Shown: piece by piece, positions 11,191 to 33,450 of the stretch | Numbering within the stretch: position 1 is the stretch's first letter | How the letters are laid out: each line of letters begins with the position of its first letter | NCBI GenBank assembly: GCA_965240325.2 | Contig: OZ251236.1 | Coordinates: 806,001-870,000, forward strand | Source: Rebecca billardiae RCC1528 | Lineage: Eukaryota; Protista; Haptophyta | Direction of reading: 5' to 3' | Length of the DNA stretch: 64,000 bases | Translations under genes and position numbers: made by a program | The notes under the pieces: model-generated | What the model saw: only the letters and a program-made list of their open reading frames with translations | Told to the model about the DNA's origin: nothing | Databases searched by the model: none

Positions 11191-11231
11191 CGGATGACAC
11201 AGGGGGGTACAGTATACCCCCTGTGTCACCG
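11191..11231. repeat. Near-perfect inverted repeat upstream of the RNF213-like gene
   Basis: CGG(A)TGACACAGGGGG(G)TA-cagta-TACCCCCTGTGTCACCG. Confidence 0.85.
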
Positions 11232-11391
11232 TTGAGCCAGGCCTTTGGGGGGCTTGGTTCGCAAGCTACCGGTTGGTCCGGCTCGACGTGTCATCAGTCC
11301 CCGCCTCCGGCCTCCCCGGCCATTCTCTCACAATCATTCTCACCGCGAAGCCGGCGAGGCGGCGATTGCATCACCGCGCGAGGCGGACAAG

Positions 11392-14300
11392 ATGGACGAC
11401 GAGATGGAGGAGACGAGTGCGCACGAGCAGGGCGAGGGGGAGGTGCTCCTTCTCGTGCTCACGCGCCACGCAACCGAGCCGCCGCGCGCCCAGCCGCTGC
11501 GCGAGTGGCGCATCTCCGCACCCATGATGGTCGGCCAACGGCTCAGCGACCAGCCGGTCGAGCTCGGCGCGCTCGGCGCGCACGTGTGGCGCGCGAGCGC
11601 GCGGGCGTACGTGCCGGAGCAGGACTCGGAGCTCTCGTGGCTCCTGCCCACCCCGCTCGGCCCCGCCGCGCGCGCGTCCATCCCGCTCGCGCGCGTGGGC
11701 GGGCGCTGGCTGGGCGTGCACGTCGAGCCCGATCGTGCCGCGCACACGCTGACGGCCGCGGCGGCGTTCGAGGCGGTGTGCGCCGCGCTGCTGCGGCCCG
11801 AGCCGACGGCGGGCGCCGACGAGATCGTCGCGAGCCTCACCGAGCTCAGCGCCGCGCTCGGCGCCATCCGCTCGCAGCTGCGCGACGAGCCGCTGGCGCT
11901 CGACGACGCGTTGGCCGCGCTCGGCCGCGTGCTCGTGGGCGGTGGCGACGGCGATGGCGGCGACGAAAGCGGCGGTGGCGAGGACGATCGCGGCGACGAC
12001 GTGGCGCTCCTCGCCGTCCGCATCTGCACGCTGCTCGGCGGCGTCGGCGCGCTGTTCGAAGCGTTCCGCCGGCGCCCGCCGCCGCACGGGCCTGGGCTCT
12101 GGGGCGGCGGCGGGCCCGGGGTTGAGCCGGCGCCGATGGTGGCGGCGCTCTGGGCGCTGCCCTGCCGCCGCGCCGCGTGGCAGCGCGCGTGCCTCGGCGG
12201 CGTGCAGACGATTCTCAAGCGCTCGGACTGGCTGAGCGGCCACGCGCACGCGGCGCTCGCGGCGCTGGCGGACGTGGACGCGCGGCCACCGTTCTGCCCG
12301 TGGGCCTCGGCACCGCTCGCTCCGCTGCTCGACGCGCTCGAGCTGCGCTCACCCGAGCAGCCGCTCCCGGACCTCGCGAGGCGGTGGCGCCCGCTGCCGC
12401 GCCCGCGCGGCGCGCCGGCGGTGCTGGCCGCCGAGCGCTCGCGCCTGCTCGGCGGGCGTACCGCCGCCGCCGCCGCGCGGCGCGAGACGCAGCTCACGCT
12501 TGCGCGGCGGCGCGGCCGCGCCGCCGCGCTCGGCGGCGCGGCCGAGGGCGGCGTGGAGCCGGGCTCCGCCGCCGCCGCCGCCGGTGGCGGCGGCGGCGCG
12601 GGCGGTTCGCACGCGCCGAGCTCGCTCGCGGTCGAGCGGGCCGAGGAGTACCGGACTCTGGCGCACCGGATTGACGAGACTTCCGAGCCGGTGCTGCGCG
12701 CGGCGGCCGCCGAGCTGCACGCCGCGCTGGACGCTTCGGCGCGGCTGAGCGACGCCGGCGCGCGCGTCGCGCCGCTGCTCGCCGCGCCGCGCGTCGCGGC
12801 CGCCGAGCCGCGCGGCGACGACCTCGACAGCTGGGCGGCGGTGCGCGCCGCCGCGCGCGCGTTCGACGCCGAGGCGTTCGCCGCGGCCGCGCACGGCGCG
12901 TCACAGGAAGTGCTGGGCTGCACGCAGCAGTTGGAGGGGCTGCGCCAGCCGGGCCCGGGGAGCATCCCGCGGCTGCGCGCGCGCGTCGCCGCGCTCGTGC
13001 GCGCGCGCCGCGCCGTGCTGCCGCGCGCGGCGCGTCTCGTCTTCGACTGCGGCCACCCGCGCGACTGGGCGCTCGCGCCGCGCGCCGCGGCGGCTCTGGA
13101 GGGCGATGGCCGTCCGAGGGCGCGGCGCGCGCTGGCGGGCGTGCGCGCGCTGCCGCAGCCCATCTCGCTGAGCGTGCTCGCCGGGCCGCTGTACGGCTCG
13201 ACCGACGAGGGCGTCAGCGGCTTCGTCGACTCAGCCGACGCACACAAGGCGCGGCTCCGCGCGCCCGCCGCCGCGCTCGAGCTACCGATCGTCCGCGTCG
13301 GCGGCGGCGCGGCTGGCGGCGGCGGCGGGCGCGAGGGCGGCGTCGAGGTGGGCGGCGGCATCCTGGTGATCGACGAGCGCAACTCCGCGCTGCGCTGGCT
13401 GCGCTGCCCCGTGGGCGGCGGCGGCGGCGCGAACGCGCGCGCCGGCGGCGGCGCCGGCCTGCTGACGGCACAGCAAGACACGGAGGTCACCGCCGTGCTG
13501 GCGCGCGGCGCGTGCGCCGTGATCACGGTGGCCGGCCGCGCGGGCGCGGGCCACGCCGACGGGCCGACGCGCACGGCGATGTTCAAGCAGCCGCGCGACG
13601 CGCTGGCGAGCACGCGGCTGCGCCTCGCGCCGCTCGTCGTGCTCGTCGCCGACGCGGGCAACCACTGCGTGCGCGCGCTGCCGTGGGGCGGCGCGGGGCC
13701 GCTCGAGGTGCGCACGGCTCTCGGCACGGCGGGCAAGGCGGGGAGGCCGTCGCTTGAGAAGTCAGGGAAGCGAGAGGGCTCGGCGGTGGAGGGCGCGGCG
13801 CTCAACGAGCCGTCGAGCGTGCTCGAGCTCCCGGGCGGCGACCTGCTCATCGCCGACACCGGCAACAATTGCATCAGGCAGGTGGTGCGGTCCGCGAACG
13901 CCAAGGCGGCCGTCGGCGGGCGCGGCGGCGGCGGCGGCGGCTCGGCGGCCGGACTTTTTGAGTCCGACCGGATCGTGGTGGTCGCAGGCTCGTGTGGCGG
14001 CACGCCGGGCGTGCAGGACGGCGACTCCGAGGCCTCGCTCTGCTTCCGCCCGAGCGGCCTCGCCCTGTGCGCCGACGGCTCGGTCCTCTTCAGCCAGCCG
14101 CGGCTCACAGCGGCGGTGGCGCCCGCGCGCGAGGGCGGCGCGCGCGGCGCGGGCGGCGCGAGCGGCGCGCTGGGCGCGGTGCGCCGGCTTACACCCATCG
14201 ATGACCCTGAGCGCAAGAAGAAGTCCCTCGCGTTCTGGGAGTGCACCACGCTGTACGGCGGCGGCGGGTGCGAGCCCGCCGAGCCGTCGGCGGCGGCTGC

Positions 14301-15673
14301 GGCCGCGGCCGAGTCGGGGCGGCGTGACTCATCCGGCTCAGACGGCGGCGGTGCGGGCGGCGGCGGCGGCGGCAAGCGGCGAGGGGGCGCGCAGCCGGCG
14401 GCGGCGGCGGCGGCGGCGGGCGTCACGCTGCGCCTCGCGCCCGTGCCGAGCGCGCGATCGTTTGAAGCCGAGCACGCGCTGCGGCCGGCCGGCGCGCCGC
14501 CCGCGCACGGGTACTTACTTGCGGAGCCGAGCGGAGTGGTTGAGACCGCGCCCGGCGGACCGCTGCTAATCGTCGACGGTGGGCGGCTCGCGTATCTCCC
14601 GCCGATCTCGCGCGCGCTCGACGCCGCGGCGCGCGGCAAGTCGCTCGGCGTCGACGCCAAGGGCGCGCCCGCGCCGCCGCCGAGCGCGTGCCTGTGCTCC
14701 AGGCTTGCCGCCGAGCAGGGCGCGGCCGCGGAGGGCGGCGGCGGCGGCGCGGCGTCGCAGCTGCTCGTCACCGATCAGTTCGACGCGCTGCGCTTCGCGC
14801 GGCTCAGCACCGGTGGCGGCGGCTTCGCGGGCAACAGCAGCGCCGCCGCCGGCAGCGGAGTCCTGCTCGCCGCCGACCCGTCCGGACATCGGGTCGTGCG
14901 GCTCATGTGCGGCGAGCACGGCGCGGGCGCGGCCACCGACCGCCTGCGCGCGCTCGAGAACGAGGCGGTGCTGTCAGACGACGACGACGAGGAGGAGGAG
15001 GAGGAGGAGGAGGGCGGCGGGGGTCCGGTCGGCTTGGACGGCGCGGGGCACGAGGGCGGCGCGCGCCGCCGCTCGGCGGCGTCGCTCAACGATGCCGCGT
15101 GTGCGGTGCTGGAGGCGAGCGCCGGCGTGGAGCGCGAGCTTGCGCGCGTCGCGGCGCGCTCCGCAGCCGCGGCCGCCGCGGTGCACGCCCTCGCGGTGGA
15201 CGCGCACGCGCGGTGCCACGCGCGCGCGTGCGCGGCGCTTGCGCGCACGGCGCGCGCGCGCGCGCTCGCGCCGAGCGCAGCGGCCGTCGCGCTCACGCTG
15301 ATTCGCAACGCGCCGCACGTGAGCTCGCTGCTGCCGCTGCTCGGCGGCAGCGTCCAGCTCGACGCGAGCCTGCGCGGCGCGGCGCGGCGCGCGCTGATCG
15401 CCGTGCTCGCCGAGTCCGTCTGGGCGCGCGGCGCCGCCGACGCCGACGGCGGCGGTGGCGGCGGCGGCGGCGCGCGCGGCGCAGACGCGGCCACCGCCGA
15501 CGCGGCGGGCGGCGGCGGCGGCGGCTCGGCGCTGCTACCCGCCAGCTCGGGCCTGCTGCACACGCCGGCAGCGCCCGGGCCATCGAAGCCGTCGGAGCAG
15601 CAGTGGGTCGCCGATCTGACGACGCTTCTGTTGAGCGCCCACGCGCACCGCGCGACGGCCGCGGCCACGGCTG

Positions 15674-15736
<63 letters not shown>

Positions 15737-16122
15737 ACGACGAGGGCGGCGGCGGCGGAGGCGAGGGCGGCGGCGGCGCGCCTGCGCTGATTGATGCGAG
15801 CGTTGTGTGCGAGGTGCTGAGCAGCCCGCGCTTCGCCGTCGGCCTGAACGCGCTCAGTCTCTCGCTGCTCGCGCACGGCCTGGCCGCCTGCCTGCCGCCG
15901 CCGGCGCAAGCCGCCGCGGCCGGCGCGGGAGCCGCCGCGGCCGGCGCGGGCGCGGGCGACGGCACGGCCGGCGGCGCCTCGGGCGCGCCGGCCGCGGCGG
16001 CGGATGGTGACGAGGCCGAGGCGATCCCGGTGCGCATCGGCGGCGGCGCGCTGGCCGAGGCCGCCGTCGCGTGGCTCACGCGCCTTGCGCGTGTTTCGCC
16101 CGCGGGCGCGGCGCCGGCGGCC

Positions 16123-16171
<49 letters not shown>

Positions 16172-19100
16172 AGCAGGAAGGAGCGCGCGGCGCGGCGGCG
16201 CTGTCGCCGCTCGCGTGGCTCGCGACGCACGAGCCGGCGTCAGCGTCGGCGTGGCCGAGCGTGCGCGCGCACGCGGCCGCGTGCCTCCCGCCCTCCGCCG
16301 CCGCCGCCGCGCCCTCCGCCGCCGCCCTCCGCCGAGCGTTCGCTTGGCTCGCCGCCGCCACTCTGCGATTGCACGGGCAGTACCGCGGGCGCGCGCGCGC
16401 GCTCACGCTGCTCGGCGAGCTCGTGGGCGTGGCGGAGCGCGTGGAGCGCGCGCACGCGCGCGCGGGCGCCGCGGGCTCGCACGGCGGCGGCGGCGACGAC
16501 GGCGCGGCGGCGGCTTGCCCGGCCCGCGGCGGCGGCGCCGAGCACGACTGGCGCAGCGCGTGCGCGCGCGAGCTGGCCGCTGTCGCGCACGCCGCCGCGG
16601 ACAAGCTGAGCCCCGCGGCGGTGGTCGCGGCCGTGCTGCCTCAGCTCGGCGCGGAGGGCGGCGCGCTCTCGGCCGCGCAGCCCGCCGAGCGCGCGCGCGG
16701 CGTGCGCCTCGCCCTCGGCGTGCTCGCGAGCGCCGCGGCGCGCGCGCGCTCGCAGGCGCTCGCACTGCCCGGCGAGGGACCGCCGCCGCCCGCCGCGGCG
16801 GCGGGCGGCGAGCGCTCGCTCGCGCTTCGGCACGTGCTCGCGGAGCCGACGCTGTGGCTGCGGCTGCTCACGTGGCACCGCGCGGCGGCGCACGCCCTCG
16901 ACGCCGACGGCGCCGCGCGCCTCTGCGCCGCCGCGGACCGCTCCGCGCTCGGCGCGCTCACGGCCGAGGTCGCCCATGCGCTTCTCTCGGCCGCGCGCGC
17001 GCCGCGCGCGCGCACGCTCGGTGAGCTGGAGAGCGCGCGGCGCTGCGCGGGGCAGCTGCTCTCGGCGTGGTCGGAGTGCGGCGTGCGCGTCTCGGCGTCG
17101 GAGCTCGACGGCGCGTTCGACGCGCTCGACGAGCTCTCGGTCCGAAAGCGCATGGCGCTCGACGTGCTGCTGCTCCGCTGCGCGGACGCGACGCCCACGC
17201 GCTGGCTTCTTGCCGCCGAGAGCCGGTGGGCCGATCTGACGCTGGACGAGGCGGAGTGGATGCTGCGCGCGCACACGCGCGACGAGGGCGGCGTGGAGCT
17301 GCGCGACGAACCGGCGGGCGCGCTCGGCGCGCACGCCGCGCCGCCGCCGCCGCCGCCGCCGCGCACGCGGCTCGCGCTGGTCGCCACCGCGGCGGCCGGT
17401 GCCGGCGACGACGACGACGGCGGCGAGGGCGTCGGCGGCGGCGGCGGCAGCGGCGGCGCGCGGCCTATGGTGCTGCACCGCCTGCCGCGCGCGCTCTCCG
17501 CCGCGCTTGAGTGGCTGCACGCGCTGCAGGGCAGCGCGCTCTTCGACGCTCTCTGGGCGCACGCGGCGGCCTCTGAGATGGGCGCGACGCCAGCCGGGCG
17601 CGGTGCGTCGGGCGCGGGCGCGCGCGCCTCCGACGAGGCGGCGGCGATGGGCCTGGGCGACGCGCTGTGGGCCGCCGTCGACGTGTCGTCGTCAGACGCG
17701 GAGGAGGCGGGCGCGCGCGCGTGCGTGGCCGCGCTGTGCGCCGCGCGCGCCGCCTACGCCGCCGTCTTCTCCGCGCTCGACAGCGGCACAGCCGAGTACG
17801 CGCAGCTGTGCGTGTGGGCGCCACCTCTGCTCGCGTCGCCTGACGAGGTGCGGTTGCTCTCTGCGTGCGCCGCGCCCATCGCCGCCGCCGACGCCGACGC
17901 GCGCGCCGCGCCGGGGAATCAGACCGCGCGGGCAGCAGAGCATCAGACCTACGACGACGAGGAGGACTGGCTCACCGCCGACGTCGACGGCGCGTGGGTG
18001 GAGCGCTTGCTCCGCGCGCTGGACGATTTTGCGCTCGTGCGCAGCGTGCGCGAGGCCGCGCCGCGCGCGCTGCGCACGCTCTCGCTCGCGCAGCGGCTGG
18101 TCGCGCCCGGCGCGCTCGCCGCCTGCCAGCAGGCGGCGGCGGCGCTCGGCGCGCTGCTCGCCGCGATCGACGGCGGCGCGGCGCGGCGCGGCGGTGGCGG
18201 CGGCGGCGACGCGCCGCCCGCGCTCACACTTGCGCACGTCGCGCCCCTCGCCGAGCGCGCGCGCCTCGACATCGACCGGCGGCTTCTGCTGCTGCACGAC
18301 GGGCTGATCGGCGCTTTGCTCGCGCACGAGCGCACCCTCGAGTTCCTCAGGCACCGGCTCGTCACCGACACCGACTTCAGCTCAGCGGTCGAGATGGCCA
18401 TCGGCTCGACCGAGATGCGCTGCCCGGCCGAGCTGTGGAGCCGTGCGCAGGGGTGCGTGGACGAGCGCCCGCTCTCGACGCTCGCGTCGGTGCGCTCGTA
18501 CCTGCACGCGCACATCTACCGGCCCGCACCGCTGTACCCGACGCTCGGCGCGCTGCTCGACGCCGTCGGGGGCTGGGACTGGGGCCGCGCGCCGGACGTG
18601 GCGGCAGAGTTGGCGGCGGTGGATGAGTTACACGATGCGCTCGTAGAGCTGCTGGAGGGCGACGCGGACGACGCAGCGCCCAACAGGCTGGTGCAGCTCG
18701 CGCGGCCCGCGAGGCAGGCGGCGTGGCTCTGCGCCTCCGAGCCGCCCGCCGGCGCGGCCACCGGCGGCGGCGGCGGCGGCGCCGACGCCGGCGCGGACGC
18801 GGAGGGCGGCGGCGCCGACGCCTCGGCGCCGGCGCACGGCGCGAGCTCGCCGCCGCCTTCGCTGTGGCTGACGCATCGCGTCGAGCGCGATGGCTCGTGC
18901 GCGTACCTCCCGGCCGCCGAGGTGCACGACTTCCGAGCCTCGATCCTGCTCGCGCGCGTCGCCGGTCGCGGCGAGGACGTGCAGCAGCTCGTCGACGCCT
19001 TCGTCACTGAGCTCGCCAGCATGGCCGCCCTCGCGCGCTGCCTCGCGCGCACGCGCGCGCAGGGCCACTTTGGGCTGGCAAGCTATGAGGTGCGCGTGCC

Positions 19101-22100
19101 GTTCGGCACGCCCGCGGCGGAGATGGCGGCGCTGCTGCGCGCCGCGCGCGAGCGCGAGCGCGCGTGGGCCGACGCCGTGCGCACGTGCCGCGAGACTTGC
19201 TATTTTGCGAACGCGGCGCCGGCGCGCGCGCTGTGGCCGCTGCTGCGCGCGCTGCGCGCGAGCGAGCGCGCGGCGCGCGAGGGCGGCGAGGCGCGCGCGC
19301 GCGCCGCGACCGCCGGTCTCGCGGCCGCGCTCGCGCCGTGGCTCGACCTCGCCGGCGCGCGCGCCGACGACGCGGCCGTCGACGCGGCCGACGACGCGGC
19401 CGATGGCCTGGCGCTCGCGAGCGCGCGCCGGCTGCTGGCGGGCTGGGAGGAGGCGCGCGGCGGTGCGCGGTGCGCGCGTGTCGGCTCGGACGAGGACGCT
19501 CGCGACGCGCTGCGCAGCCTCGCGCACGCGCTCGACGAGGCGCTGTGCCCGCTGCCCGCCGTCGAGCGCGCGCTGCCGCCCGCGGGCTCCGCCGCGCCGG
19601 CCGCCGCCGCGTCAGCCGCGCTCGGCGGCGGAGGCGCCGCGTCGGCGTCGGCGGCGGCGCGCGGCGCGGACGTGGACGATGCCGGCCTCGCGCTCGGCTC
19701 AGGCGAGGTCGGAGTTGTCGTCGCGGACGGCGAGAGCACGGTCGCGCAGCACGTGCTGTCGCTGTACGCGCGCGCGCGCGCCGCGCCCGAGTCGCTCGAG
19801 TGCCTGTGGTGCGCGCGTGGCATGGCGGACGACGAGCTCCCCCGCTTGCTCGCGCGGTGGCGGGGCGCGGCGCGCGCCGGCCGCGCGCACCGCCTCCACT
19901 GCGTCGCGGCGGCTGACGCTCTGTCCGCAGAGGCACAGCGTCTGCTTGTGCGTGAGCTTCAGCTCGCGCTCGCGTCGGGGCGCGCGGTGCTGGCGCAGGG
20001 CGGCGGCGGCGGCGCGCGGCGCGGCGCGGGCGCGGGCGCGTCCTCCGCGCCGCCGCCGCCGCTTGATTCGTCATGGGGGGCATCAGCATGGCTGCCGCCG
20101 CTCGCCATCGTGTGCGGGGGCTCCGAGCGGAACATTCTGATCTCGCATCTGGGACACTCGCGGGTGCCGACGCGGCCGCTCCCGCCGCCCGCGCTGCACG
20201 CCGCGGCCGCGCACATCGGCGCGGGCGTGCTCCTCACCTCCGCCATCGCCGGCGCGGGCAAGACCTTCGCCGCGCGCGCGCTCGCCGCCGAGCGCGGCCT
20301 GACGTACGCGCACGCGCCCATCCACGGGGAGGACTTGCGCGCGCTCGGCGCGCGCGTGGCGCGCGCGCGGCGCGGCGGGCGCGGCGGCGGCACGCTGCTG
20401 CACCTCGATGTGGCGGACGTGCCGTCGGCGGCGCGCGCGCTCGACCAGGCGCTGTTCAGGCTGCTGCTGCTGCGCGTCGCGCCCACCACCGCGCCACCGG
20501 CGGCGGCGGAGGACGCCGAGCCCGCCGGCCACGGCGCCGAGGCGTCCGCGGCGCGCGGCCGCGGCGGCGGCGGCGGCGGCGCGGCGGACGCCGCCGTGCC
20601 GCCGGCCGCGCCGGGCGCGGACGGCGCGGAGCGCGAGTGGATCAGCGCGCGCGCCGCCGCGGAGGGTGCGCGGCTGCTGCCCGCGTCGCTGCCGGCGCGC
20701 GCCATGCAGTTTGTGCTCGAGATCCCGAGCGGCCGGCTGCGCTCGCGCTGGACCGTCGGAGAGCTGCTGCCGACGCGCCGGCTGCGCGCGGACGAGGGCT
20801 CGCTGCGCGTGACGCGCGCCGCGCTCCGCGCCGGCCTGCTCTCGGACGCCGCGGCCGCGGAGGCGCACGCCTCGCTGCAGCTCGCGTGTCGCGCCCTCGA
20901 CGTGCTCGACCGCCATGGCGGGCTCTTCCCCCACCGCTTCCCGACGGCGGCGCCCGGCGGTGGCGGCGGCGCGGGTGGCGCAGAGCTCGGCGGCGGCGGC
21001 GCGCCAAGCGGCGGCGGCCACGGCGGCGGCGGTGTCGCCGCGGGCAAGCGGCCGGCCGCCGCGAGCGCCGGCGCCGGCGCCGGCGCCGAGCCCGGCGGCA
21101 CGCCGCCGCTCGTCACGCTGTGCGACGCGCCGCGCATCGAGTGCGCCGCGGCCGACCTCCCCGCGGCGCGCTGCCACTCGCTGCTGCGCGCCGCGCTGCG
21201 CGCGCCCGCGCGCGCGCCGCTCAGCCTGTGGTCGGCCTGGGGCTTCGTGCGCGTGTTCGCGTGGCAGCTGCGCGAGCTGCACGCCCCGGACTCGGCGATC
21301 AACCAGTCGATGCTCCCGGACTCAGGCGCCGCGCAGGAGCACGACGCGTTCGTCAAGTGCGCGATGAAAGGCGAGCTGATTCGCTTCCTGGAGCGCACGG
21401 CTCGCGAGTTTGCGACGCGCGCCGCGGTGCCGGCGGGCTCGGGCGAGCTCGTCGCGCTGCGGGCGAGCGGCTTCGGCGAGATCGACTACGGGACGTCGGT
21501 CCGGTACAACGGGCGGTGGGAGCGGTGCCCGTTCGACAACGAGGGGCGGCCGTGCTTCCGCAAGGCGCAGGACGGTCTCTTCTGCTACTACCGCTCGCTC
21601 GCGCGCGCGTGGGTCATTCACACCGAGGTGGTGCCGTCCGGACTCGTCCTGTGCTCCGCGCCCGGGGAGTCGTTCCAGAACGGCTGGCTCACCGCGCCCG
21701 GCTGGGAGGTGGACGCGCTGGTCGTGGTCGCGCGCGCGCGGCACGCGGGCGGGCACGAGGCCGAGGCGGTGCGCGTGTCGGGCGTGGGCAGCGCGCGCGG
21801 GCGTCGCTCGATCGGCCCGCAGGAGATGGGCGTGTACCTTCGGCAGCCGCCATACGACGACGTGAACGGCCGCGAGCACTTCGTGAAGGGCGCGCGGGAC
21901 GCGGGCGGCGGCGGGCTCACGCTCGTCCGGCCGGGCGGCGAGGGCGGCGCGGCGGACGGCGCGCCGGCCGACGGCTCGCGCCGGCACCTCTTCTGGTCGC
22001 GCGCCGAGTCGCGCTGGGTGCTCGCGGCTGTGTGCAACGAGTCTCAAGGCGCGTTCGCTGTCTCGGAGGGCAGCGCGCTCGAGGGCCCGTGGTGCTCGAT

Positions 22101-22260
22101 GCCGCCCACCGTGAAGGAGAACGGCCGGTTCGTCGGCGTGCACGCCGACGCGGCGGAGGGCGGCGGCACGGGCGGCGCGGAGGCCGACGCCCTCGACGAC
22201 GAGCCCGAGCGCGGCGGCGGCGCGGACGGCGGCGGCGGGGACGGAGGCGGCATCGGCAAC

Positions 22261-22291
<31 letters not shown>

Positions 22292-24396: not shown

Positions 24397-24433
<37 letters not shown>

Positions 24434-26352
24434 GCGCGGCGGCGCCGCCGGCGGTGCCGCCGGGCGCGGCGCGCGTGCCCTCGGGCGCGCCGCCGCCGGG
24501 CGCGCCGCTCGCCGCGCGCCGCGCCTCCTCCGGCCTGCGCCGGCTGCTGCCGTGGCTGCGCCCGCTCTCGCAAGCCTACCACCAGGTGTACTCGTCGCAG
24601 GCGCGGCTCGCGGCGGGCGGCCGCGACTGGCTCGGCTCTCGCGACTACTTCTCGCTGGTGAAGCTGCTCCGGGCGGAGCTGCAGCGGCGGTCGGAGCGGC
24701 AGCTCACGCCCGCGCTGCTCGCGTACGCGCTCTGCCGCAACTTTGGCGGCCAGCCCGCGCTGACGGCGCACGTGCTCGAGACTTTCGCCGCGCGCTGCTT
24801 TGCGCACGAGGCGGGGCGCGCGTGGTCGCGCGGCGGCGGCGCCGCCGCGCCGGCCGAGCTCGGCGGCGGCGGTGGCGGCGGCGCGGCGAGCGCGCTCGGG
24901 CTCGCGCCGCCGCCCGTCCTCGCCCTTGTCGCCGCCAACCTCCACGCCGAGTCCCTCGCCACGCGCCACCTGATGCTGTGCACGCGCAACGCGGCCGCCG
25001 TTGGGCTGCTCCGCGCCGCCGGGCTGCTGGACGACGCTTCCGCGGAGGTTCTCTTTGCGTCCGCGTTCGCCGAGGACCTCTCCGAGCTGCACATGGTGCG
25101 GCAGATCAACGCGGTGAAGACGGCGATGGCGCGCGGGCGCACCGTCGTGCTCGTCAACCACGACAACCTGTACGAGGCGCTGTACGACGTGCTCAACCAG
25201 CGGTACGTAGTCAAAGGGTCGCAGCGGTTGCTTCGGATTGCGATCGGCGCGCGCTCGCAGCTGTGCGCGGTGAGCGCCGGCTTCAAGCTGGTCGTGGTGG
25301 TGGAGGAGGAGCACGCGCTCTCGAGGCTCGACCCGCCGCTCCTCAACCGCTTCGAGAAGCAGCTGCTCACCCCCGCCGACCTGCTCACGCCCGCGCAGCG
25401 CGAGCTGGCCGAGTCGCTTGACGGCTGGGTCGAGGCGGTCGTGCGGCGCGCGGGCGTCGGCTCGGCGCAGGGAGCCTTCTGTGGCTTCCACTCGGGCACG
25501 GTGCCGTCCGCGGTGCTGTACGCGTGCGCACGCGCGCAGGGGGCGGTCGGCGGTGCGCGCGGCGTGGCGGGCGCCGGGGCCGCGCCCGGCGCGGCCGGCG
25601 CGCCCACCGCCGCCGTGGAGGAGGAGGCTGGCGCCGACGGCGCCGACGGCGCCGACGGCAGCGTGCCGGCCGTGGGCACGGCGGCGCGCGCGGCGCTCGA
25701 AGCTGAGCTGCGTGCGCTGCTCGCGCGCACGATGCTGCCCGTCGCCGCGCGCGCCGCGGCGCCCGACGACCCGGCGGACGCCGCGGCGTTCGCCGCGTGC
25801 TACTACGCACGTCACGCCGACATCTGCGCCGCCCTCGAGGCGTACGACCCGCCGCCTCCGACGACGCCGACGCCGACGCCAGAGGCAGAGGCGGCGGAGG
25901 CGGCGACGGCGGCGGCGGCGGCGACGGCGGCGGCGGCGGCGGCGGACCAGGCGGCGGACCAGACGGACCAGGCGCCTTCGTCCGCGCGCGGTGTGAGCGA
26001 CGCCGTGGGCGAGGGCGGGAGCGCGCCGCACTCGCTCGCTGCCGCGTTCGCCCGGCCCACCGCCGGCGACGAGCGCGCTCGCGAGCACGCGCGCTCGGCG
26101 CCCGGCGGCGGCGCCGCCGCCGTGGACGGCAGCGCCGGCGGTCGGCTGCTACTGCTGCTGACGCGCTCGCCCGCGTCGCATCTCTCCGCGCACGCGGTGC
26201 AAGCGGGCGCGCTCGGCCGGCGCACGCGCGCGCAGCTGCTGCCCCTCAGCGCCGTCCCGTCAGAGGAGGCCCTCGGGGAGGCGCTGCGAGAGTTCTACCG
26301 GAGGGGCCTGCCTCCTGCCGCCGACCAGCCTGCTGGGCGCGGCGCTCCGGAA

Positions 26353-26387
<35 letters not shown>

Positions 26388-28873
26388 GGCGCAGGGATCC
26401 GGACCGGGCCCTACCGGACCGGGCCCTCATCACCCGGCCGCGGAGGATGCGGCCGCGGCGGGCGCGCGCGCGGCGGAGCGCGGCGCTGCGGCCGCCGGCG
26501 CTGCAGCCGCCGCCACAGCCGACGCCGACTCACAGGCCACGCCAGGGCCCGCGCGACCGGCGGCGGGTGAGGCGGCGGCTGACGCCGCCGACGCCGCCGA
26601 CGCGCGTCCGCTGCTGCTGCTGCAGGCTGACCCGGTGTCTGGGCGCGCGATGCAGCTGCTGCCGCTGGCGATGCACGCCATCCAGCGGGAGCGCGCGCTG
26701 GCGCTCGGCGCGGCGGCAGACGGCGCGGCTGCGACTGCCGCGAGCGCCGCCATCGCCACTGCCGCCGCCGCCGCCGCGCCTGCCGCCGAGACAGCGGAGC
26801 CTGCGGCAGCGGCCGCGTCGGTGCAACCGGACGGCGGTGGCGGCTCCGCGGCCCCCGCGGACGCGCCAGCTCGCGCAAACGCTGACCGTGCGCGCACCGC
26901 CGCCGCCGCCGCACCGCACGCACCCGCCCAGCCGCTGCCAACCGTCGTCCTCCTCGTGCACCTCCCGCCAGGGCACCGCGGCTCGCAGCGCGCGTTCTCA
27001 CTCGACCTCGTGCGGCCCTGGGTGGCGGTCGCCGTCGACGACGTCCGGCCGGACGCGCCGGACTGCGGTCCGGGCGGTGTGGGCCGGCTGGACGCGCTCG
27101 CGGCCGACGCGGAGGGCGACCCGATCGGCAGGCTGGGCACGGCGACGCTGCTCGCCGGCTCGCCGCTCGCCCTGGTCGACTCGCTCGGCGCGGGCGCGCT
27201 GCTTGCGGTCGTGCGCGCCCGGCTACCCTCCGTGATGGCGCTCGCCCTCCCGCCGCTGGTGGCGGAGGCGGAGGGCGGCGCGCCGATGGCGGCTGCAGCC
27301 GAGGACGGCCGCGCGGGCGAGCACGACTCCGAGCCGCCGCCCCGCTCCGCCGTCGCGGGGCGCATCGCGCGCGTGCGCTCGCTGCTCGAGACTCGGCCGC
27401 AGCTCGCCGCCCTCGTCGCAAAGGGTGTGCGCACAGCGCTTGGCGCGTGCGAGCGCGGCGGCGCGCCCGGCGGCGGCGGCGAGGGCGCGCACGCGCACGT
27501 CGCGCTCGCGCTTGGCCAGCGCTTCGGCGGCTCGCTGCGCGAGGGCATGCGCGCCGCGCTGCGCGAGCTCGTCGTGCGCTCCGCCGCGGCGGTGCTGCGC
27601 GCGCTCGACGCCGACTGCGCGCTCGAGCTGCTCCGGGCGTCGGAGCGCGGCGGCGCGCGCGAAGCGCTTTGGTTCGAGATGGCCTCTCGGCTGCTCTTTG
27701 CGCAGCCGGACGGCTCGTCGGCGGCGGGCGCGCTCGCGCTCGCGCTCGCCGCCGCGCCGGGCGCGCGCGACGGCGGCGACGCGCACTGCCCGAGCCACGG
27801 CCTCCACGGCGTGCTCCGCGCGCGCTTCCCGTTTTCGCACCGGCTGCGCGCGCGGCTCGAGAGTCCGGACGTCGCCGCAGAGTTTCGTCGGCTGCTGCGC
27901 GCCGTTGGCCGCGGCGAGGAGGACGGCGGCGGCGTGGGCGACGCCGCCGCCGCCGCCGAGGCCGCGTCGGAGGAGGACGACGACGGAGCCGAGGCGGAGG
28001 CCAGCGAGCGCGCCGCCGGCGGCGGCGCGGCCGTGCCGGCCGCGCGCGCGTCGGCGCGTCTCTCGGTGAGCGAGGCGCTCGCCCGAGCGGCGGCCATCGG
28101 GCGGGAGGTGTACGGCGCCGGGCTGGATGAGCCCGGCGCGGAGGGCGGCGTGCACGGCGCGGGGGAAGCGCCCTCCGCCGCCGACGAGGCGGTCGAGCCC
28201 GCCGCGATGCTCGCCGCCTCCGCCTCCGCCGTGCCGCCGATTTCGGTCGGGTCCACGATCGCCTACGTGCACGATGCGGTCGCGCTCAGCGCGCCAGCGC
28301 TGCCGGCGCTCAGCCTGTCGAGCCAGCTGCGGCTGCACACGGCGGTGCTCCGCGCCGCGGCGCCCGGCGGCGCGGCGCTGCGCTCGCCCGCCACCGCGCA
28401 CGCCGCTCTCCTCCTGCACGCCTCGCGCACGCACCACGCCGCCGCGGCGCTGTCGGCTGCACTCTCGCGAGCGCCCGCACCGGTCGCGGCCTCCATCGCG
28501 GCGAGCGTCTTCGACGCGATCGACGGCGCGGCGGCGGGCGGGCGGGGCGTGCGCGCGGTCGACGCGGCGGTGGCCTCCTGCGTCGCGCGGGCCTTCTGCG
28601 ACGGCCTCGAGGCCGCCGTCGGCGCGGTCGGCTCGACGCGCGAGCTCGCGCCCTGGCTTGGCGCGTGGGCGAGCGCATGCTCAGCAGTTGAGCTGGACAC
28701 GTCCGCCCTGCTCGCGCACGCGCACGAGGGGGCGGGCGCGGCGGCGGGCGGCGTGCTTCCCGCCGCCGCCGCCGCCTCGCGCGACTGGGCGCGCGCGCTC
28801 GCGCTGCGCTGCTTTGTCCTGCGCGTGCTCCTCCCGACGCTCGAGAGCTCGCGCCGCGCCGAGCGCGGCGACG

Positions 28874-28916
<43 letters not shown>

Positions 28917-31426
28917 AGTTGTTGGCCAAGGCGCCTCCAGCGCGGCAGCCGGTGGCGGCGTCGTCGGTGGCGCGGCGGATGGCCCGTCCGCCTCGCTCGT
29001 GCTCGGCGTGTGCGCGGCGTGCGCCACCGCCGCCGCGGCGGCCGGGAGCCTGGAGTCGATCAGCGCGCTCATCCGGGCGGCGAGTGCGATGCGGCCTCAG
29101 CCACCGACACTGGTGGGGGACCTGATGGTGGCGCACGCGTCGGAGCAGCTGCTCGGGCGCACGGCGGTGCACGCGGGAAGCGCGGGCGCCGCGCCGCCCG
29201 AGCCCGCGCTGCTCGACGCGCTTGTCGCCCTCGTCAGCCCGCGCCGCGCGGCGGGCGCCGAGCGCGGCGCCGCGGGCGCGTCCGCCGGCGCGGCGCGGCT
29301 GCCGCTGTCGCCTGAGCACCTCGATGTGTGCGCGCGCCGCCGGCTGCTGCTGGCGCTCGTGCACGCCGCGTCGGACGCAGAGGGCGCGCGCGCGCGCGCG
29401 GTCGGCGCCGCGCTGCGCCGGCTGCCCGCGCACGGCGACGTCGCCGCCGTCGAGGCGGTGAATCTCGCCGAGGCGAGATTGGCGCACGCGGCGGAAGTTT
29501 CCGCGAACGCGCCGCGCGGCGCGGCGGGCGCGGCGCCGCCTCGCTCGCTGCTCGGCGCGGACGCGGCGGAGGGCGAGGAGGGCGGCGGCGCGCGTGCTGC
29601 GAGGCCGGCGCTCTCTCTCTCCGCCGCGCTCGCCTCGCACGGCGGGCTGCGCTGGTCGCTCGAGCAGCTCGAGGCGGTCGCGCGCGCCAAGGCGTGCGTG
29701 CGCGCGTACACGGCAGACCTACTTTCGCATCTGCAGGGGCGCACGCCCGCGGCGGCGCGCGCCGCGGCCGAGGCGGCGGCGGGTGGCGCCGACGGCGGGG
29801 GCGGCGGCGGCGGCGGCGGCGCGGAGGGCGGCGGTGGGAGCGCCGGCGGCGCGGGCGCCCTGCTCCGCGCGCACGCCGACGCGGCGACCGCGCTCCGCCT
29901 CTCGCGCGGCGCGGCGCAACTCGCGCTGCAGCTGCTGCTTCGCGACGGTGGCGTGGACGCGCTTGTGGCCCTGCTGGGCGAGGCGGAGCGGGACGTGCCG
30001 TGGCTGCCGTTCCGGCGGGAGGGCCTCGCGGCGGTGTCGGCGCACGGCGCGGCGCAGCCCACGCTCGACGCGCTCGCCCTGCTCGCGCGCACCTCGCAGC
30101 TGTACGCGCGCGTGTGCGCGTGGGCCGAGCGCGCGCGCACGGCCAACGCGTGGCTCGGCGCAGAGGGCGAGATCGCGGCGCGCGAGGCGATGCTCGCCGA
30201 CGCGGCGCTGCGGCCGTGCGCGGCGGACGTGGCGGGAATGCTCACGCTCACCGCGGCGATGGCGCGCGCGACCGACCCGGTGCTCGCCGCGCCGTGGCGC
30301 GCCAAGCCCCCGGGCTCCGAGTCCGCGCACCGTCGGAAGGTGCGCCGACTCTTCTGCGCGGCGCTGTGCTCAGGGCTGTCCGACACGGCGGTGCGCCAGG
30401 CCGCGCTGGCGATCGGCGCGGTCGGGCTCGACGCGGCGGCGTTCAGCGCGCACAAGGAGGGCAGCGCGCCCAGCGCCGCGCGCCGCCGCGCGCTCGTGCG
30501 CCAGCTCGGCCTCAGCCTCGCGCTGCGCACCGCCGCGGGCTCGACCGGCGGCTGGCTGCACGCGTGTCTGCTCGACCCTGCGTCGCAGGCGGTGTCGCAC
30601 ATGCCCACGTGCGATGGCGGCATCCCGCTCGAGCGGCTGATGGCGACGCTGGGGTACGCCGGGTGGTATCGCTGCCCGAATGGACATCTTTACTCTGTCG
30701 GCGAGTGCACCATGCCGATGGAGGTCGCCAAGTGCCCCAAGTGCGGCGCCGTGATCGGCGGCCGATCGCACACGGCCGTCGCCGGCGTCGTGAGGCTCGG
30801 CACGACTGACGAAATCCTCGAGGAGGCGAAGCGCGGCAACATGGAGAAGCTGGCGAGCGTGCTGCGCGCGGTCGGGCTGGCGGGTGGCGGCGGCGGCGGC
30901 TCGGTCCGCTTCCCGCGGCGCACGACCAGCTGCCCGATCGGCTTCGACCGCGCCTCCTTCGACGCGTCGGACGGCGAGACGATTGTGGACGTGCTGCCGC
31001 GCGCCGACCGCACGACGTGCTCTGTGCTTCGCGTCTTCATGTTCGCGACGTTCGCCGCGCGGCTGGCGATCAACGAGGCGCTGGCCGACGCGGAGGGCGA
31101 GCTGGCGGAGCAGGGCGCGGGCGGGGGCGAGCCCGAGCAGGGGTCGGGCGCGCCCGCCGCCGCGGACGACGACGGTGGCGGCCTGCAGAGCGGCCGAGGC
31201 GGCGGCGCGGGAGGCGGCGGCGGCGCGCGCAGCCGCGGCCGCGGCCGCGGCGCCGGCCACAGCGGCGCGGGCGGCGGCGGCGGCCGCTCGACCGGCGGCG
31301 GCGGCGGCGGCAGCGCCGACGCCGGCTCGGCCGCGCGCGCCGCCCCCGCCGCGGTCGCGGTGCTCAACGAGGGCGGCCTGCGCGCGCTGCGGCGCGACAA
31401 GGCCCTCCTCCGATTACTCGAGGGCA

Positions 31427-31482
<56 letters not shown>

Positions 31483-33450
31483 AGCTGGAGCGGCTCGAGC
31501 ACGGCGGCGCGCGCGTACGTGTGTGCGCGGCTGGACGCGGAGTGGCGCGGTCTCGCCGAGGCGCACGGCCTCTCGGACGACGACGTCGCGCTGTGCCTGC
31601 ACGCGTGCGCAGGGCTGCTGCTGCAGCACGCGCGGCGCGCGGGCGGCCAGCCCGTCTTCTCGTCCGAGCAGGCGCGCTCCGACTTTGAGATTGGCTTCCA
31701 GAGGCACGTCGTCGCGCCCGTCTTTGCCGGGCACAGGCAGCTGCGCGCGACGGTGAGCGCGCTGCGCGCGAGGCTCGCCGACGGCACCGCCGAGGCGCGA
31801 GCGCGCGCGGCGTACGGCGAGGAGCTCTGGCGCTCGCTGCAGGAGGGCGCGCGGCACGGCGGCGCCGTCGACGTGGGCGACGACGGCGCCGACGGCAGCG
31901 GCGCCGGCGGCCGCCGCGCGGCCGCCGCCGCGGCGCCGGCCGACGCCGCGGCCGCGCTGCCGCCGGGCGGCGTGTGGCACCTGTCCGAGCCGATCTCGTT
32001 CGGCGCGGCGCGGCGCGCGTTCAACCTCGCCTCGAGCAACGCGCGCGCGTGCCCGCTGCTCGCCGAGCTGCTGCGCGACGAGCGGCGCGCGGCGGCGATC
32101 GGCGGCGCGGCGGACGTGCTCGCGTGGCACGCGCTGCTGTTCGACGCGCTCCGGCCGCCCATCTCTCGCGAGGAGGCGTCGAGCCTGACCAACGCGGACG
32201 TGGTCGCGCGGCTGCCGGCCTCGCGCCGCGCGGCGGGGCGCGCGACGCTGCGCCGCTTCTGCGACGCGTTCAACGCCGGCCTGCCGCTCGTCCCCACGCT
32301 GTACGAGTGCCAGCCCAACCCTTTCCTGGGCGACGACGGCGGCGTCGACCTGTCCGGCACGCGCGTGCGCGCCGTGCGGATGGGGCCGTCGGTGGCGGTG
32401 GCCTTCTCGCTGCCCGCCGTGCACGACGGCGGCGCGGCGGGCGGCGGCGTGGACGCGCCGGGCCTCGCGACGATCCAGCTGCTCGCCACCCTCGTCAACG
32501 CGCACAACGCGCTGCTCGGCCGGCTCGGCCGCGACGCCGCGCGCCTCGGCGCGGCGGGCGCGCTCCCGCGCCTCTCGCACCGCACGCCCGCGCCCGCCGC
32601 GCGCCGCGCGCTGCTGCAGTACGATCGGCTCGCGCTGCTCGAGGCGCTGTACGCGCAGCACCCGGGGTGCGGCGCGGCGCTCGACGAGCGCACGTTCGCG
32701 CGCGTCGAGGGCTCGCTCCGCTCCTCGCTCCTCGCCACCGCCACGCCCGTCGACCTGCACGTGGAGCACTACGGCTACGCGGGCGCGGCGCAGCGCTCGG
32801 GCGTGCTGGGCCGGCTGCGCGCGCGCGTGCCGCAGCGCGCGCTCGCGCCGCCCGTGCTCGAGCAGCTCTGGGCGGAGCTCGACACGGCGCGGCAGCTGCG
32901 CCGGCTGCTCGCGCTCGTCGAGGAGGCCGCGCGCTTCGCCGGCGCGCTCGGCTCCGCCGACGAGACGGCCGCCGACACGCCGCTGCACGAGTACGCGCTG
33001 CGCGCGCTCTGCGTGCCGGAGGCCGAGTGGCTCGAGCTCGCGCCCGCGGCGGTGGTGCGGCACGTGCGGCTGTGCCACCTGAGCGCGCTGCTCGTCGCGC
33101 TCGAGGCGGGCGCCGAAGGCGCGACCGCCGCCGACGCCGTCGCGCCCAAGTACGCGCAGCCGCTGCCGCCCGAGCTGCGCGCCGCGCTCGCGCACGCCGC
33201 GCCGCGCGTGCCGCACGACGTGCTGCTGCCGCTGCTGCGCGACCTGATGGCGGAGCAGCTGCACTCGGACGCGTGGGACGCGGCCGCGCCGCTCAAGATG
33301 TACCTCGCGTGGTCGACCGAGCTCGAGCTCGAGGCCGAGCCGTGGTGGCGGCTGCTGCCCGACGAGCTCGCGCTCGCGCACGCGCGCGAGACCTTCCGGC
33401 TGCTCTCCGCCGCGAGCGGCGGCGGCGCGGGCGGCGGCGGCGGCCAGTGA
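11392..33450 (+). CDS. RNF213: Giant RNF213/mysterin-like AAA+ ATPase and RZ-finger E3 ubiquitin ligase with N-terminal NHL repeats (~7352 aa)
   Basis: Uninterrupted ORF, first ATG 11392. RNF213-type motifs in order: GAGKT...LHLDV (20251); GECGCGKT...VFLDELN (22672); GKPGSSKT...LLLDEVGLAEHSPDMPLKVLH...GLSNWALDPAKMNR (23962); LYEALYDVLNQRY; PPLLNRFEK; RZ finger CPNGHLYSVGECTMPMEVAKCPKCGAVIGGRSH (30664-30771). NHL-type repeats at ~13150-14910. Confidence 0.9.

What the first reader, a model, noticed from the sequence alone, without database searches (positions are those of the whole stretch)
11392..33450. A 22-kb uninterrupted ORF encoding an RNF213-like immune E3 machine in an apparent alga
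Seen: the RNF213 AAA2/AAA3/AAA4 signatures in order, with intact Walker A/B in the latter two, followed by an RZ finger. Knowledge: animal RNF213 is a dynein-like ATP-regulated E3 that ubiquitylates bacterial LPS and coats intracellular pathogens. Inference: a cell-autonomous defence system in a unicellular eukaryote, about 2,000 aa longer than the human protein and with lineage-specific modules. Non-animal homologues exist, so novelty lies in architecture and host.
Basis: partly seen in the sequence, partly recalled or inferred. Interest (0 to 1): 0.8.

Follow-up and report, generated by a model that had tools for sequence, protein, structure and literature searches.

The report
RING-less RNF213-like giant ligase in alga
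A very GC-rich alga carries one unbroken 22-kb gene for a 7,352-residue relative of the human immune ubiquitin ligase RNF213 that keeps the ATP-driven ring and the catalytic RZ zinc finger but lacks the RING finger, belongs to an algal branch of the family I found no description of, and has no tested function.

Summary
Window 11392-33450 (+) is one stop-free reading frame of 7,352 codons, and its codon pattern looks coding along its whole length.

The protein matches solved RNF213 structures (E 1e-99) and matches midasin only at one P-loop. Profiles built from non-animal relatives trace RNF213 in the same order throughout:
- linker;
- AAA2, which binds ATP but has no catalytic Glu;
- AAA3 and AAA4, with intact Walker A and B motifs;
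- hinge/E3-back;
- E3-shell fold (Z 23.7 to the human E3 module);
- RZ finger with all six key Cys/His residues;
- C-terminal domain.

Three things differ from animal RNF213:
- There is no RING finger.
- The N-terminal 2,250 residues are unrelated and carry an NHL propeller.
- A tandem beta module with no family name sits between AAA2 and AAA3. The same unit occurs in arrays in front of caspase domains in other proteins.

On a tree the protein is sister to a Prymnesium parvum protein. Both lie in a 45-member clade whose named members are all algae, separate from the animal/Capsaspora clade, so it is probably a paralogue rather than an orthologue.

The most likely mechanism is an ATP-gated E3 that accepts ubiquitin on a cysteine of the RZ finger. 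An immune role is only inferred. No RNA data were available.

Earlier notes of this scan report further RNF213-like genes elsewhere in this genome.

The parts
11392..33450 (+). Complete ORF with stop codon; 7,352-aa RNF213-like protein
11392..13308 (+). N-terminal aa 1-639: no detectable relatives and no Pfam family
13309..14781 (+). NHL-repeat beta-propeller region, aa ~640-1130. Best Pfam repeat at aa 813-830; two motifs of the type LxADxGNxCxR at aa 750 and 818.
   Evidence: Pfam NHL E 8e-8. 20 of the 30 nearest named Atlas clusters share the NHL family set, score 0.96. Weak BLAST matches to the same N-terminal region of clade-A relatives. The fold itself was not modelled.
14782..18138 (+). 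aa 1131-2249: Ala/Gly-rich and helical stretch with no detectable relatives. It stands where the RNF213 N-arm would be.
18139..19341 (+). aa 2250-2650: block homologous to the part of RNF213 just before its AAA ring. I take it for the linker; domain borders are from memory.
   Evidence: Profile A5 of non-animal relatives hits mouse RNF213 chain 7oik 1380-1678, E 8e-9
19489..21171 (+). aa 2700-3260: AAA1/AAA2 region. AAA2 Walker A Lys K2957 (window 20260-20262). The Walker B position reads HLD (D3006) with no catalytic Glu.
   Evidence: Profile A2 hits RNF213 7oik 1757-2098, E 3e-31, with the P-loops aligned. AAA2 of RNF213 binds ATP but lacks Walker B (PMC7311170).
21424..22176 (+). aa 3345-3595: two tandem beta units inserted between AAA2 and AAA3; no Pfam family
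   Evidence: Alignments A1 and A7. Model pLDDT 78. Found in 39 of 44 clade-A hits and in none outside the clade. Only 238 hits among 1.84 billion representatives. Arrays of the unit precede caspase domains in P0294 and P0329.
22339..25533 (+). aa 3650-4714: AAA3-AAA4 core, running into the following AAA unit. AAA3 K3767/E3866; AAA4 K4197/E4267.
   Evidence: phmmer to RNF213 PDB chains, E 1e-99, three collinear stretches
25534..26961 (+). aa 4715-5190: rest of the AAA ring (AAA5/6 region), interrupted by an Ala-rich insertion (about aa 4975-5185) that includes a (GCC)n repeat
   Evidence: A clade-A profile hits aa 4908-4970 and 5069-5294, E 2e-10 and 1e-18
26959..28881 (+). aa 5190-5830: block homologous to the hinge/E3-back part of RNF213
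   Evidence: Profile A3 hits 7oik 3504-3889, E 4e-8, and human 8s24 3599-3979, E 4e-10
28846..28995 (+). aa 5819-5868: Gly-rich loop just before the stretch where the RING sits in animal RNF213 and in basal clade-A relatives. There is no Cys cluster here or further on before the RZ finger.
29002..30612 (+). aa 5871-6407: helical E3-shell region
   Evidence: A clade-A profile hits aa 5917-6407, E 4e-20. The model of aa 5860-6900 matches the human RNF213 E3 module 9jwg_A with Z 23.7, 544 residues aligned, next best Z 6.6. Foldseek ranks 1-7 are all RNF213.
30646..30792 (+). RZ finger, aa 6419-6467. Zn ligands C6428, H6432, C6448, C6451; C6439 and H6460 align with the human nucleophile C4516 and general base H4537.
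   Evidence: Pfam PF20173, E 3e-20. Alignment to human RNF213. Residue roles from PMC11549300
31969..33447 (+). aa 6860-7352: C-terminal domain homologous to the RNF213 CTD
   Evidence: Profile A4 hits human 8s24 4780-5235, E 3e-43
10368..11391 (.). About 1 kb of non-coding spacer shared head-to-head with a kinesin gene on the minus strand (its ATG is at 10367). This leaves little room for upstream exons.

Best explanation
This is a real nuclear gene, probably a single exon, of a haptophyte-type alga. It encodes a 7,352-aa member of the RNF213 superfamily of giant AAA-RZ ubiquitin ligases. It belongs to a subfamily found in algae (called clade A here) that has lost the RING.

Shown by sequence or fold:
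- A dynein-like AAA core. AAA2 can bind ATP but not hydrolyse it; AAA3 and AAA4 keep their Walker A and B motifs.
- An RNF213-type E3 module and C-terminal domain.
- An RZ finger with the four zinc ligands and the Cys/His catalytic pair.

Inferred from the animal enzyme:
- ATP binding at AAA3/AAA4 switches on the E3 module.
- An E2 loaded with ubiquitin passes ubiquitin to Cys6439 of the RZ finger (transthiolation).
- His6460 helps pass ubiquitin on to the target.
- No RING is needed, as in the active RING-deleted mouse and human enzymes.

Inferred from architecture only:
- The N-terminal NHL propeller takes the place of the animal N-arm/CBM20 as the part that chooses the target.
- The tandem beta module between AAA2 and AAA3 is a further binding or regulatory surface.

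The biological role is not shown. The leading guess, at roughly one in three, is cell-autonomous surveillance that marks invaders or damaged structures with ubiquitin.
For: - ORF and coding pattern.
- RNF213 at E 1e-99, against midasin 3e-9 on one P-loop.
- Collinear profile hits built from non-animal sequences only: 3e-31; 4e-10; 3e-43; 2e-9.
- E3 module fold: Z 23.7; Foldseek ranks 1-7 all RNF213.
- RZ finger: Pfam E 3e-20, and all six key residues aligned to the human protein.
- RING-independent activity of RNF213: PMC7311170 and PMC11549300.
- Relatives assembled from transcriptomes as complete ORFs carry NHL, AAA and RZ in one chain: P0008 (5,677 aa) and P0035 (4,888 aa).
- Tree: sister to the Prymnesium parvum protein (SH-aLRT 99), inside a clade of 45 (100).
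- The beta unit also stands in front of caspase domains.
Against: - No expression data: no RNA run was listed, so transcription, transcript ends and splicing are untested.
- No biochemical data for any non-animal member.
- The AAA5/AAA6 units and the NHL propeller were not modelled.
- The E3 model is only moderately confident (mean pLDDT 64).
- The immune role rests on analogy with animals, although the protein lies in another clade and has a different N-terminus.
- The sister protein from Prymnesium shows no RZ finger. That may be a gene-model fault, or it may be real.
Confidence: 0.75

Rival explanations
1. The molecular machine is the same, but it does a housekeeping job rather than defence. 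Candidates are quality control of lipid droplets, organelles or large assemblies, or RNA-linked regulation through the NHL propeller, as in TRIM-NHL proteins.
For: Nothing in the window ties the gene to defence; its neighbours are a kinesin, a KDM5-like demethylase and a phosphatase. From my own knowledge, animal RNF213 also acts at lipid droplets, and NHL propellers of TRIM-NHL ligases bind RNA or proteins. The protein is not in the animal clade.
Against: The family shows the head-swapping typical of defence genes: RING, U-box, RBR, UBA, PH, FYVE, CBM20 and NHL occur among relatives. Cymbomonas has members in three clades, and this genome is reported to hold several copies. The inserted beta unit is shared with caspase-domain proteins. 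All of this is circumstantial.
Confidence: 0.35
2. It is the direct orthologue of animal RNF213, much diverged, and not a separate old paralogue.
For: The architecture is collinear from linker to C-terminus. Basal clade-A members P0034 and P0041 still have a RING at the animal position.
Against: An unrooted quick tree splits clade A from the animal+Capsaspora clade with SH-aLRT 100. Cymbomonas has members on both sides and in a third clade, which points to duplication before the groups diverged.
Confidence: 0.15
3. The 22-kb frame is not one mature coding sequence. It hides in-frame introns or is made as several transcripts.
For: An intron of the neighbouring kinesin gene is 169 nt, 87% GC, and has no stop in the upstream exon's frame, so an open frame cannot exclude introns. 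Short Gly/Ala runs at aa 4965-5019, 5819-5868 and 6599-6641 lose the frame signal.
Against: All conserved blocks lie in one frame. 99.5% of windows prefer that frame. The weakest stretch is a (GCC)n repeat with no GT donor in it. These runs fall between conserved blocks, so their removal would not change the architecture. Transcriptome-derived relatives are single chains.
Confidence: 0.1
4. It is an ATPase scaffold that has lost ligase activity.
For: There is no RING. The sister protein in Prymnesium shows no RZ finger.
Against: All six RZ residues, the E3 shell and the C-terminal domain are conserved. In alignment A6 of 30 clade-A members the RZ Cys/His columns are invariant.
Confidence: 0.05

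Closest known systems
Animal RNF213 / mysterin (PDB 6TAX, 7OIK, 8S24, 9JWG)
   Same: - Region before the AAA ring.
- AAA2 that binds ATP only.
- Active AAA3 and AAA4.
- Hinge/E3-back and E3-shell fold.
- RZ finger with zinc ligands and the Cys/His pair.
- C-terminal domain.
All are in the same order.
   Different: - No RING.
- The N-terminal 2,250 aa are unrelated, with an NHL propeller and no CBM20.
- A 250-aa tandem beta module lies between AAA2 and AAA3.
- Long Ala/Gly inserts.
- 2,145 aa longer.
- A different deep clade.
Unnamed algal 'clade A' relatives, such as Prymnesium parvum AB1Y20_005488 (P0012, 6,914 aa), Cymbomonas CYMTET_34083 (P0022) and dinoflagellate proteins P0042/P0043
   Same: - Core identity is 38-44% over the AAA3-AAA4 BLAST segment and up to 54% on trimmed tree columns.
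- They share the beta insert (39 of 44 members).
- Most have no RING.
- Nine have an NHL region near the N-terminus.

   Different: - This is the longest member seen.
- Outside the NHL region its first 2,300 aa match none of them.
- Unlike P0012, it has a clear RZ finger.
ZNFX1
   Same: It shares the RZ-type zinc finger (Pfam PF20173).
   Different: ZNFX1 is built on an SF1 helicase, not an AAA ring, and has no RNF213 E3 shell or C-terminal domain (10.1101/2025.10.14.682297, abstract).
Midasin/Rea1 and dynein heavy chain
   Same: Six AAA units in one chain; dynein is the closest structural relative of the RNF213 ring (PMC7311170).
   Different: Sequence likeness here is limited to 58 residues around one P-loop (E 3e-9). 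They have no E3 module or RZ finger.
TRIM-NHL ubiquitin ligases (such as TRIM71, TRIM32, Brat)
   Same: They work alike in one respect: an NHL propeller as target-binding head on a ubiquitin ligase. This rests on my own knowledge and was not tested.
   Different: They are small RING/B-box/coiled-coil proteins with no AAA ring and no RZ finger. They are analogues, not relatives.

Membership tests
RNF213 superfamily (AAA-RZ giant ligases) | AAA3 and AAA4 with intact Walker A and B, most similar to RNF213 and not to midasin or dynein | tested here: met
   E 1e-99 to RNF213 chains; K3767/E3866 and K4197/E4267 align with the human Walker residues; midasin 3e-9 on one P-loop
RNF213 superfamily (AAA-RZ giant ligases) | AAA2 with a nucleotide-binding P-loop but no catalytic Walker B | tested here: met
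   The GAGKT P-loop aligns with the mouse GVGKS P-loop; HLD aligns with mouse HID, with no Glu
RNF213 superfamily (AAA-RZ giant ligases) | Full ring of six AAA units | tested here: inconclusive
   AAA1 and AAA5/6 are covered only by collinear profile hits to relatives and by spacing. No model of the ring was made.
RNF213 superfamily (AAA-RZ giant ligases) | RNF213-type E3 module fold. The authors found no counterpart of it in the PDB (PMC7311170). | tested here: met
   Z 23.7 over 544 residues to the human E3 module, next best Z 6.6; Foldseek ranks 1-7 all RNF213; model pLDDT 64
RNF213 superfamily (AAA-RZ giant ligases) | RZ finger with four zinc ligands plus a nucleophile Cys and a general-base His | tested here: met
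   PF20173, E 3e-20; C6428, H6432, C6448, C6451, C6439 and H6460 align with human C4505, H4509, C4525, C4528, C4516 and H4537
RNF213 superfamily (AAA-RZ giant ligases) | C-terminal domain | tested here: met
   Profile A4 hits human chain 4780-5235, E 3e-43
Animal-type RNF213 (orthologue of the human gene) | RING finger inside the E3 module | tested here: not met
   No RING, U-box or IBR family reached E 0.01 in the whole-protein Pfam scan. No 60-aa window with 5 or more Cys exists outside the AAA3 P-loop region and the RZ finger. No match to the RING pattern I used. RING is present at that place in P0034, P0041, Mytilus and Oscarella.
Animal-type RNF213 (orthologue of the human gene) | N-arm with a CBM20 carbohydrate-binding domain | tested here: not met
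   No CBM20 hit. An NHL region is there instead. The first 2,250 aa match no animal sequence.
Animal-type RNF213 (orthologue of the human gene) | Groups with animal RNF213 on a tree of the AAA core | tested here: not met
   It lies in a 45-member clade (SH-aLRT 100) apart from the animal+Capsaspora clade (100). This was a quick unrooted tree of 97 rows and 807 columns; no rows were left out.
Animal-type RNF213 (orthologue of the human gene) | ATP-dependent E3 activity, and ubiquitin coating of pathogens | not testable with these tools
   Needs biochemistry and infection experiments
NHL-repeat beta-propeller | Repeated NHL motifs forming a propeller | tested here: inconclusive
   Pfam NHL E 8e-8, but only one repeat passes on its own. 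Two clear motifs at aa 750 and 818. Atlas features favour NHL families (0.96). The fold was not modelled.

The most novel reading that the evidence does not exclude
Clade-A RNF213-like proteins would be an ancient defence ligase of algae that works without a RING. The NHL head and the tandem beta module (a sensor-type repeat also wired to caspase-like proteases) would recognise viruses, bacteria or damaged compartments. ATP-gated RZ-finger transthiolation would then coat the target with ubiquitin. This would place RNF213-type cell-autonomous immunity before the split of the major eukaryotic groups, with several specialised paralogues in one alga.
Probability: 0.25. Interest if true: 0.8.

Novelty: new variant of a known kind. 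Interest (0 to 1): 0.55.

Why it matters
RNF213 has been studied only in vertebrates, as the main moyamoya disease gene and as the ligase that puts ubiquitin on bacterial lipopolysaccharide.

A natural version without a RING still keeps the ATPase switch, the E3 shell, the RZ catalytic pair and the C-terminal domain. That agrees with the proposal that the RZ finger, not the RING, is the catalytic heart of the enzyme.

This protein also shows that the scaffold takes on different target-binding heads (NHL here), and that it is old and widespread in microbial eukaryotes.

It gives algal biology a concrete candidate for cell-autonomous defence or quality control. It also points to a beta repeat with no family name that is shared with caspase-domain proteins.

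I found no paper describing non-animal RNF213 relatives, but such proteins do sit unnamed in public databases.

Tried and rejected
- Calls that failed or timed out.
- RNA evidence. No run was listed.
- Fold of the beta insert. Foldseek against the PDB gave nothing below E 0.001. The best match is Cryptococcus DNMT5 residues 817-1158 (VIA-align Z 8.0; Foldseek probability 0.97), an unnamed part of that enzyme. I treat this as a weak lead only. The ESM Atlas shape search was uninformative.
- Hidden intron in the Ala-rich stretch at aa 4965-5019. Rejected: it is a (GCC)n repeat with no GT donor in it.
- Naming the organism through the neighbouring phosphatase. This gave only the window's own protein, on a Logan contig of run ERR14847151, and diatom-like relatives.
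- Paper searches with loose term rules returned nothing on RNF213 and say little.
- P0323 and P0359, which seemed to hold many beta units. Their Pfam rows do not look like real domain matches, so I did not use them as examples of the module.


Full report
**1. The observation**

The window is extremely GC-rich: 0.75-0.81 across the feature and 0.62-0.69 in non-coding stretches.

Frame 1 of the plus strand is open from 11245 to the stop at 33448-33450. The first ATG is at 11392, which gives 7,352 codons. With this base composition my own arithmetic expects about one stop per hundred codons in a random frame. That is roughly 73 stops over this length, so an unbroken frame is far beyond chance. 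The longest antisense ORF in the window is 1,588 aa.

The frame looks coding throughout:
- GC at codon positions 1, 2 and 3 is 0.82, 0.62 and 0.93.
- No 30-codon window has GC3 below 0.70, whereas the flanks are about 0.67 at all three positions.
- By the ORF's own codon usage, the ORF frame beats the two shifted frames in 99.5% of 40-codon windows. The exceptions are Gly/Ala runs.

Upstream, a kinesin gene runs the other way with its ATG at 10367. Only about 1 kb of spacer is left, so upstream exons are unlikely.

**2. What the protein is**

Pfam finds an RZ-type zinc finger (E 3e-20, aa 6419-6467), an AAA_5/AAA_22 P-loop region near aa 3756-3800, and an NHL repeat.

Against all PDB sequences, the C-terminal half hits only RNF213 strongly: E 4e-99 to 5e-95 over nine entries. 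The match comes in four collinear stretches, which are the AAA3 P-loop, AAA3-AAA4, the next AAA part, and the RZ finger. Midasin reaches only 3e-9, on 58 residues around one P-loop.

A word search found 96 large relatives. I used them to build profiles from non-animal sequences only and searched the PDB with each profile. Every profile hit RNF213 and nothing else of note, and the hits run in order along the chain:

| Part of this protein (aa) | Match in mouse chain 7oik, unless stated | E-value |
|---|---|---|
| 2250-2650 | 1380-1678 | 8e-9 |
| 2700-3260 | 1757-2098, P-loops aligned | 3e-31 |
| 5190-5830 | 3504-3889 | 4e-8 (4e-10 to human) |
| 6860-7352 | human 8s24 4780-5235 | 3e-43 |

Profiles of the closest relatives cover the two remaining gaps:
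- aa 4908-5294, the AAA5/6 region;
- aa 5917-6407, the E3 shell.

An AlphaFold2 model of aa 5860-6900 was built with 30 aligned relatives (mean pLDDT 64). Its best match is the human RNF213 E3 module, with Z 23.7 over 544 residues against 6.6 for the next entry. RNF213 also fills Foldseek ranks 1-7. The authors of the RNF213 structure reported that this fold has no other counterpart in the PDB (PMC7311170).

**3. Functional residues**

- AAA2 has a P-loop (K2957). At the Walker B position it reads HLD, with no Glu. RNF213 AAA2 is the same: it holds ATP as a structural glue and cannot hydrolyse it.
- AAA3 (K3767, E3866) and AAA4 (K4197, E4267) keep the residues that correspond to human K2426/E2488 and K2775/E2845.
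- In the RZ finger, C6428, H6432, C6448 and C6451 align with the human zinc ligands. C6439 and H6460 align with C4516 and H4537, the proposed nucleophile and general base.
- In an alignment of 30 clade-A members the RZ Cys/His columns are invariant.

**4. What is different**

*No RING.*
- No RING, U-box or IBR family reached E 0.01 in the whole-protein Pfam scan.
- The only Cys clusters are the AAA3 P-loop region and the RZ finger.
- A RING pattern finds nothing.
- In animals (Mytilus, Oscarella) and in two basal clade-A proteins (P0034 from Pinguiococcus, and P0041) a RING sits about 300-500 residues before the RZ finger.
- In this protein a Gly-rich loop (aa 5819-5868) comes just before that stretch. 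The modelled stretch after it is helical and has no Cys cluster.

*A different N-terminus.*
- The first 2,250 residues match nothing in animals. Except for the NHL region they match nothing even in the closest relatives.
- The NHL assignment rests on Pfam (E 8e-8), two clear motifs, and language-model features.
- I did not model the propeller.

*A beta module inserted between AAA2 and AAA3.*
- About 250 residues (aa 3345-3595) form two tandem beta units. They have no Pfam family and model confidently (pLDDT 78).
- The insert is present in 39 of 44 clade-A hits. It is absent from the five basal clade-A hits and from every hit outside the clade.
- A profile search of 1.84 billion representative proteins found only 238 matches. 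Most are fragments of this same family.
- The unit also occurs in tandem arrays in other proteins. In two of them (P0294 and P0329) the array precedes a caspase (Peptidase_C14) domain. One further protein (P0336) has it together with an arginine-kinase-type domain.

*Long low-complexity inserts.*
- Ala/Gly-rich inserts account for part of the extra length.

**5. Place in the family**

I made a maximum-likelihood tree of the AAA3-AAA4 core: 97 rows, 807 columns, quick search, unrooted, no rows left out.

- The protein is sister to Prymnesium parvum AB1Y20_005488 (SH-aLRT 99).
- Both lie inside a clade of 45 (100). Its named members are all algae: a haptophyte, the prasinophyte Cymbomonas, Pinguiococcus and two dinoflagellates.
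- Animal RNF213 sits with Capsaspora in a different clade (100).
- Cymbomonas has members in three clades, so the clades look like old paralogues.

I therefore file the gene in the RNF213 superfamily but not as an orthologue of the human gene.

The make-up of the query row departs from that of the alignment, and the tree has no outgroup, so deep branching should be read with care.

Earlier notes of this scan report other RNF213-like genes in the same genome: one with an RBR-type finger in place of the RZ finger, and one with a vWA insert. I did not check those notes. They fit a multi-copy family.

**6. How it most likely works**

Shown: all parts that RNF213 needs for RING-independent activity are present and conserved.

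Inferred from the animal enzyme (PMC7311170; PMC11549300):
- ATP at AAA2 ties the ring together.
- The nucleotide state at AAA3/AAA4 gates the E3 module.
- An E2 hands ubiquitin to Cys6439.
- His6460 assists transfer to the substrate.

Inferred from architecture alone: the NHL region and the beta insert choose or dock the target.

The role in the cell is open. Points in favour of defence are the variety of heads among relatives, the several paralogues, and the beta unit shared with caspase-domain proteins. All of these are circumstantial. A housekeeping role fits the data about equally well.

**7. Caveats**

- No RNA run was listed, so expression, transcript ends and splicing are untested.
- An open frame is weak evidence against introns here. 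An intron of the neighbouring kinesin gene is 169 nt, 87% GC, and has no stop in the upstream exon's frame.
- The only stretches that lose the frame signal are short Gly/Ala runs between conserved blocks. The weakest one is a (GCC)n repeat with no donor site in it.
- Relatives assembled from transcriptomes as complete ORFs carry NHL, AAA and RZ in one chain.

**8. Novelty**

Proteins of this kind are in public databases as unnamed 'RZ-type domain-containing' or 'hypothetical' proteins.

In the paper library I found no description of non-animal RNF213 relatives:
- RNF213 with 'haptophyte': 0 papers.
- 'RNF213-like': 3 papers, none relevant.
- RNF213 with 'algae': 10 papers, none by title or abstract about algal relatives.

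The structural paper calls RNF213 conserved in vertebrates.

My verdict is a new variant of a known kind. It is real, well supported as a homologue, and has an architecture that sheds light on the mechanism, but its function is unproven.

Noticed in passing
window 5789-10367 (-): A kinesin gene (motor domain plus a KIF21A-like domain) lies head-to-head with the RNF213-like gene. One GT-AG intron at about 9044-9212 is 169 nt, 87% GC, and has no stop in the upstream exon's frame. This shows that introns in this genome can hide inside open frames.
   Followed up: partly
P0294 and P0329 (proteins); window 21424-22176: The roughly 100-aa beta unit inserted in the AAA ring has no Pfam family. In other proteins it occurs as 3-4 tandem copies in front of a caspase (Peptidase_C14) domain, and in P0336 together with an arginine-kinase-type domain. 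It is a rare mobile repeat: 238 hits among 1.84 billion representatives.
   Followed up: partly
model of window 21139-22341; PDB 7r76_A residues 817-1158: The best structural match of the beta insert is an unnamed part of Cryptococcus DNMT5 (VIA-align Z 8.0 over 220 residues; Foldseek probability 0.97). Its meaning is unclear.
   Followed up: partly
window 52935-60752 (+): A 2,606-aa open frame with JmjN, ARID, JmjC, PLU-1 and PHD domains: a KDM5/JARID1-type histone demethylase.
   Followed up: no
window 50042-52000 (+): A histidine-phosphatase (phosphoglycerate-mutase-like) gene. Its exact product (P0097, 562 aa) is on a 4.7-kb Logan contig of run ERR14847151. The nearest relatives are from diatoms and other ochrophytes.
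   Followed up: partly
window 60803-63880 (+): A 1,026-aa open frame with a coding-like GC3 (0.89) and no Pfam hit.
   Followed up: no
P0012 (Prymnesium parvum AB1Y20_005488), residues 5500-6500: The sister protein shows no RZ finger by Pfam or phmmer, although its C-terminal domain is conserved. This is either a gene-model gap or a real loss.
   Followed up: no
window 26350-26390: A (GCC)n trinucleotide repeat encodes a poly-Ala run inside the AAA5/6 region. It may vary in length between strains.
   Followed up: no
relatives P0034, P0049, P0050, P0056, P0058, P0066, P0083, P0087-P0090: Other members of the superfamily carry RING+PH, U-box, RBR/IBR, UBA, FYVE, CBM20, EF-hand or WWE domains. 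The scaffold seems to swap its heads and ligase fingers freely.
   Followed up: partly
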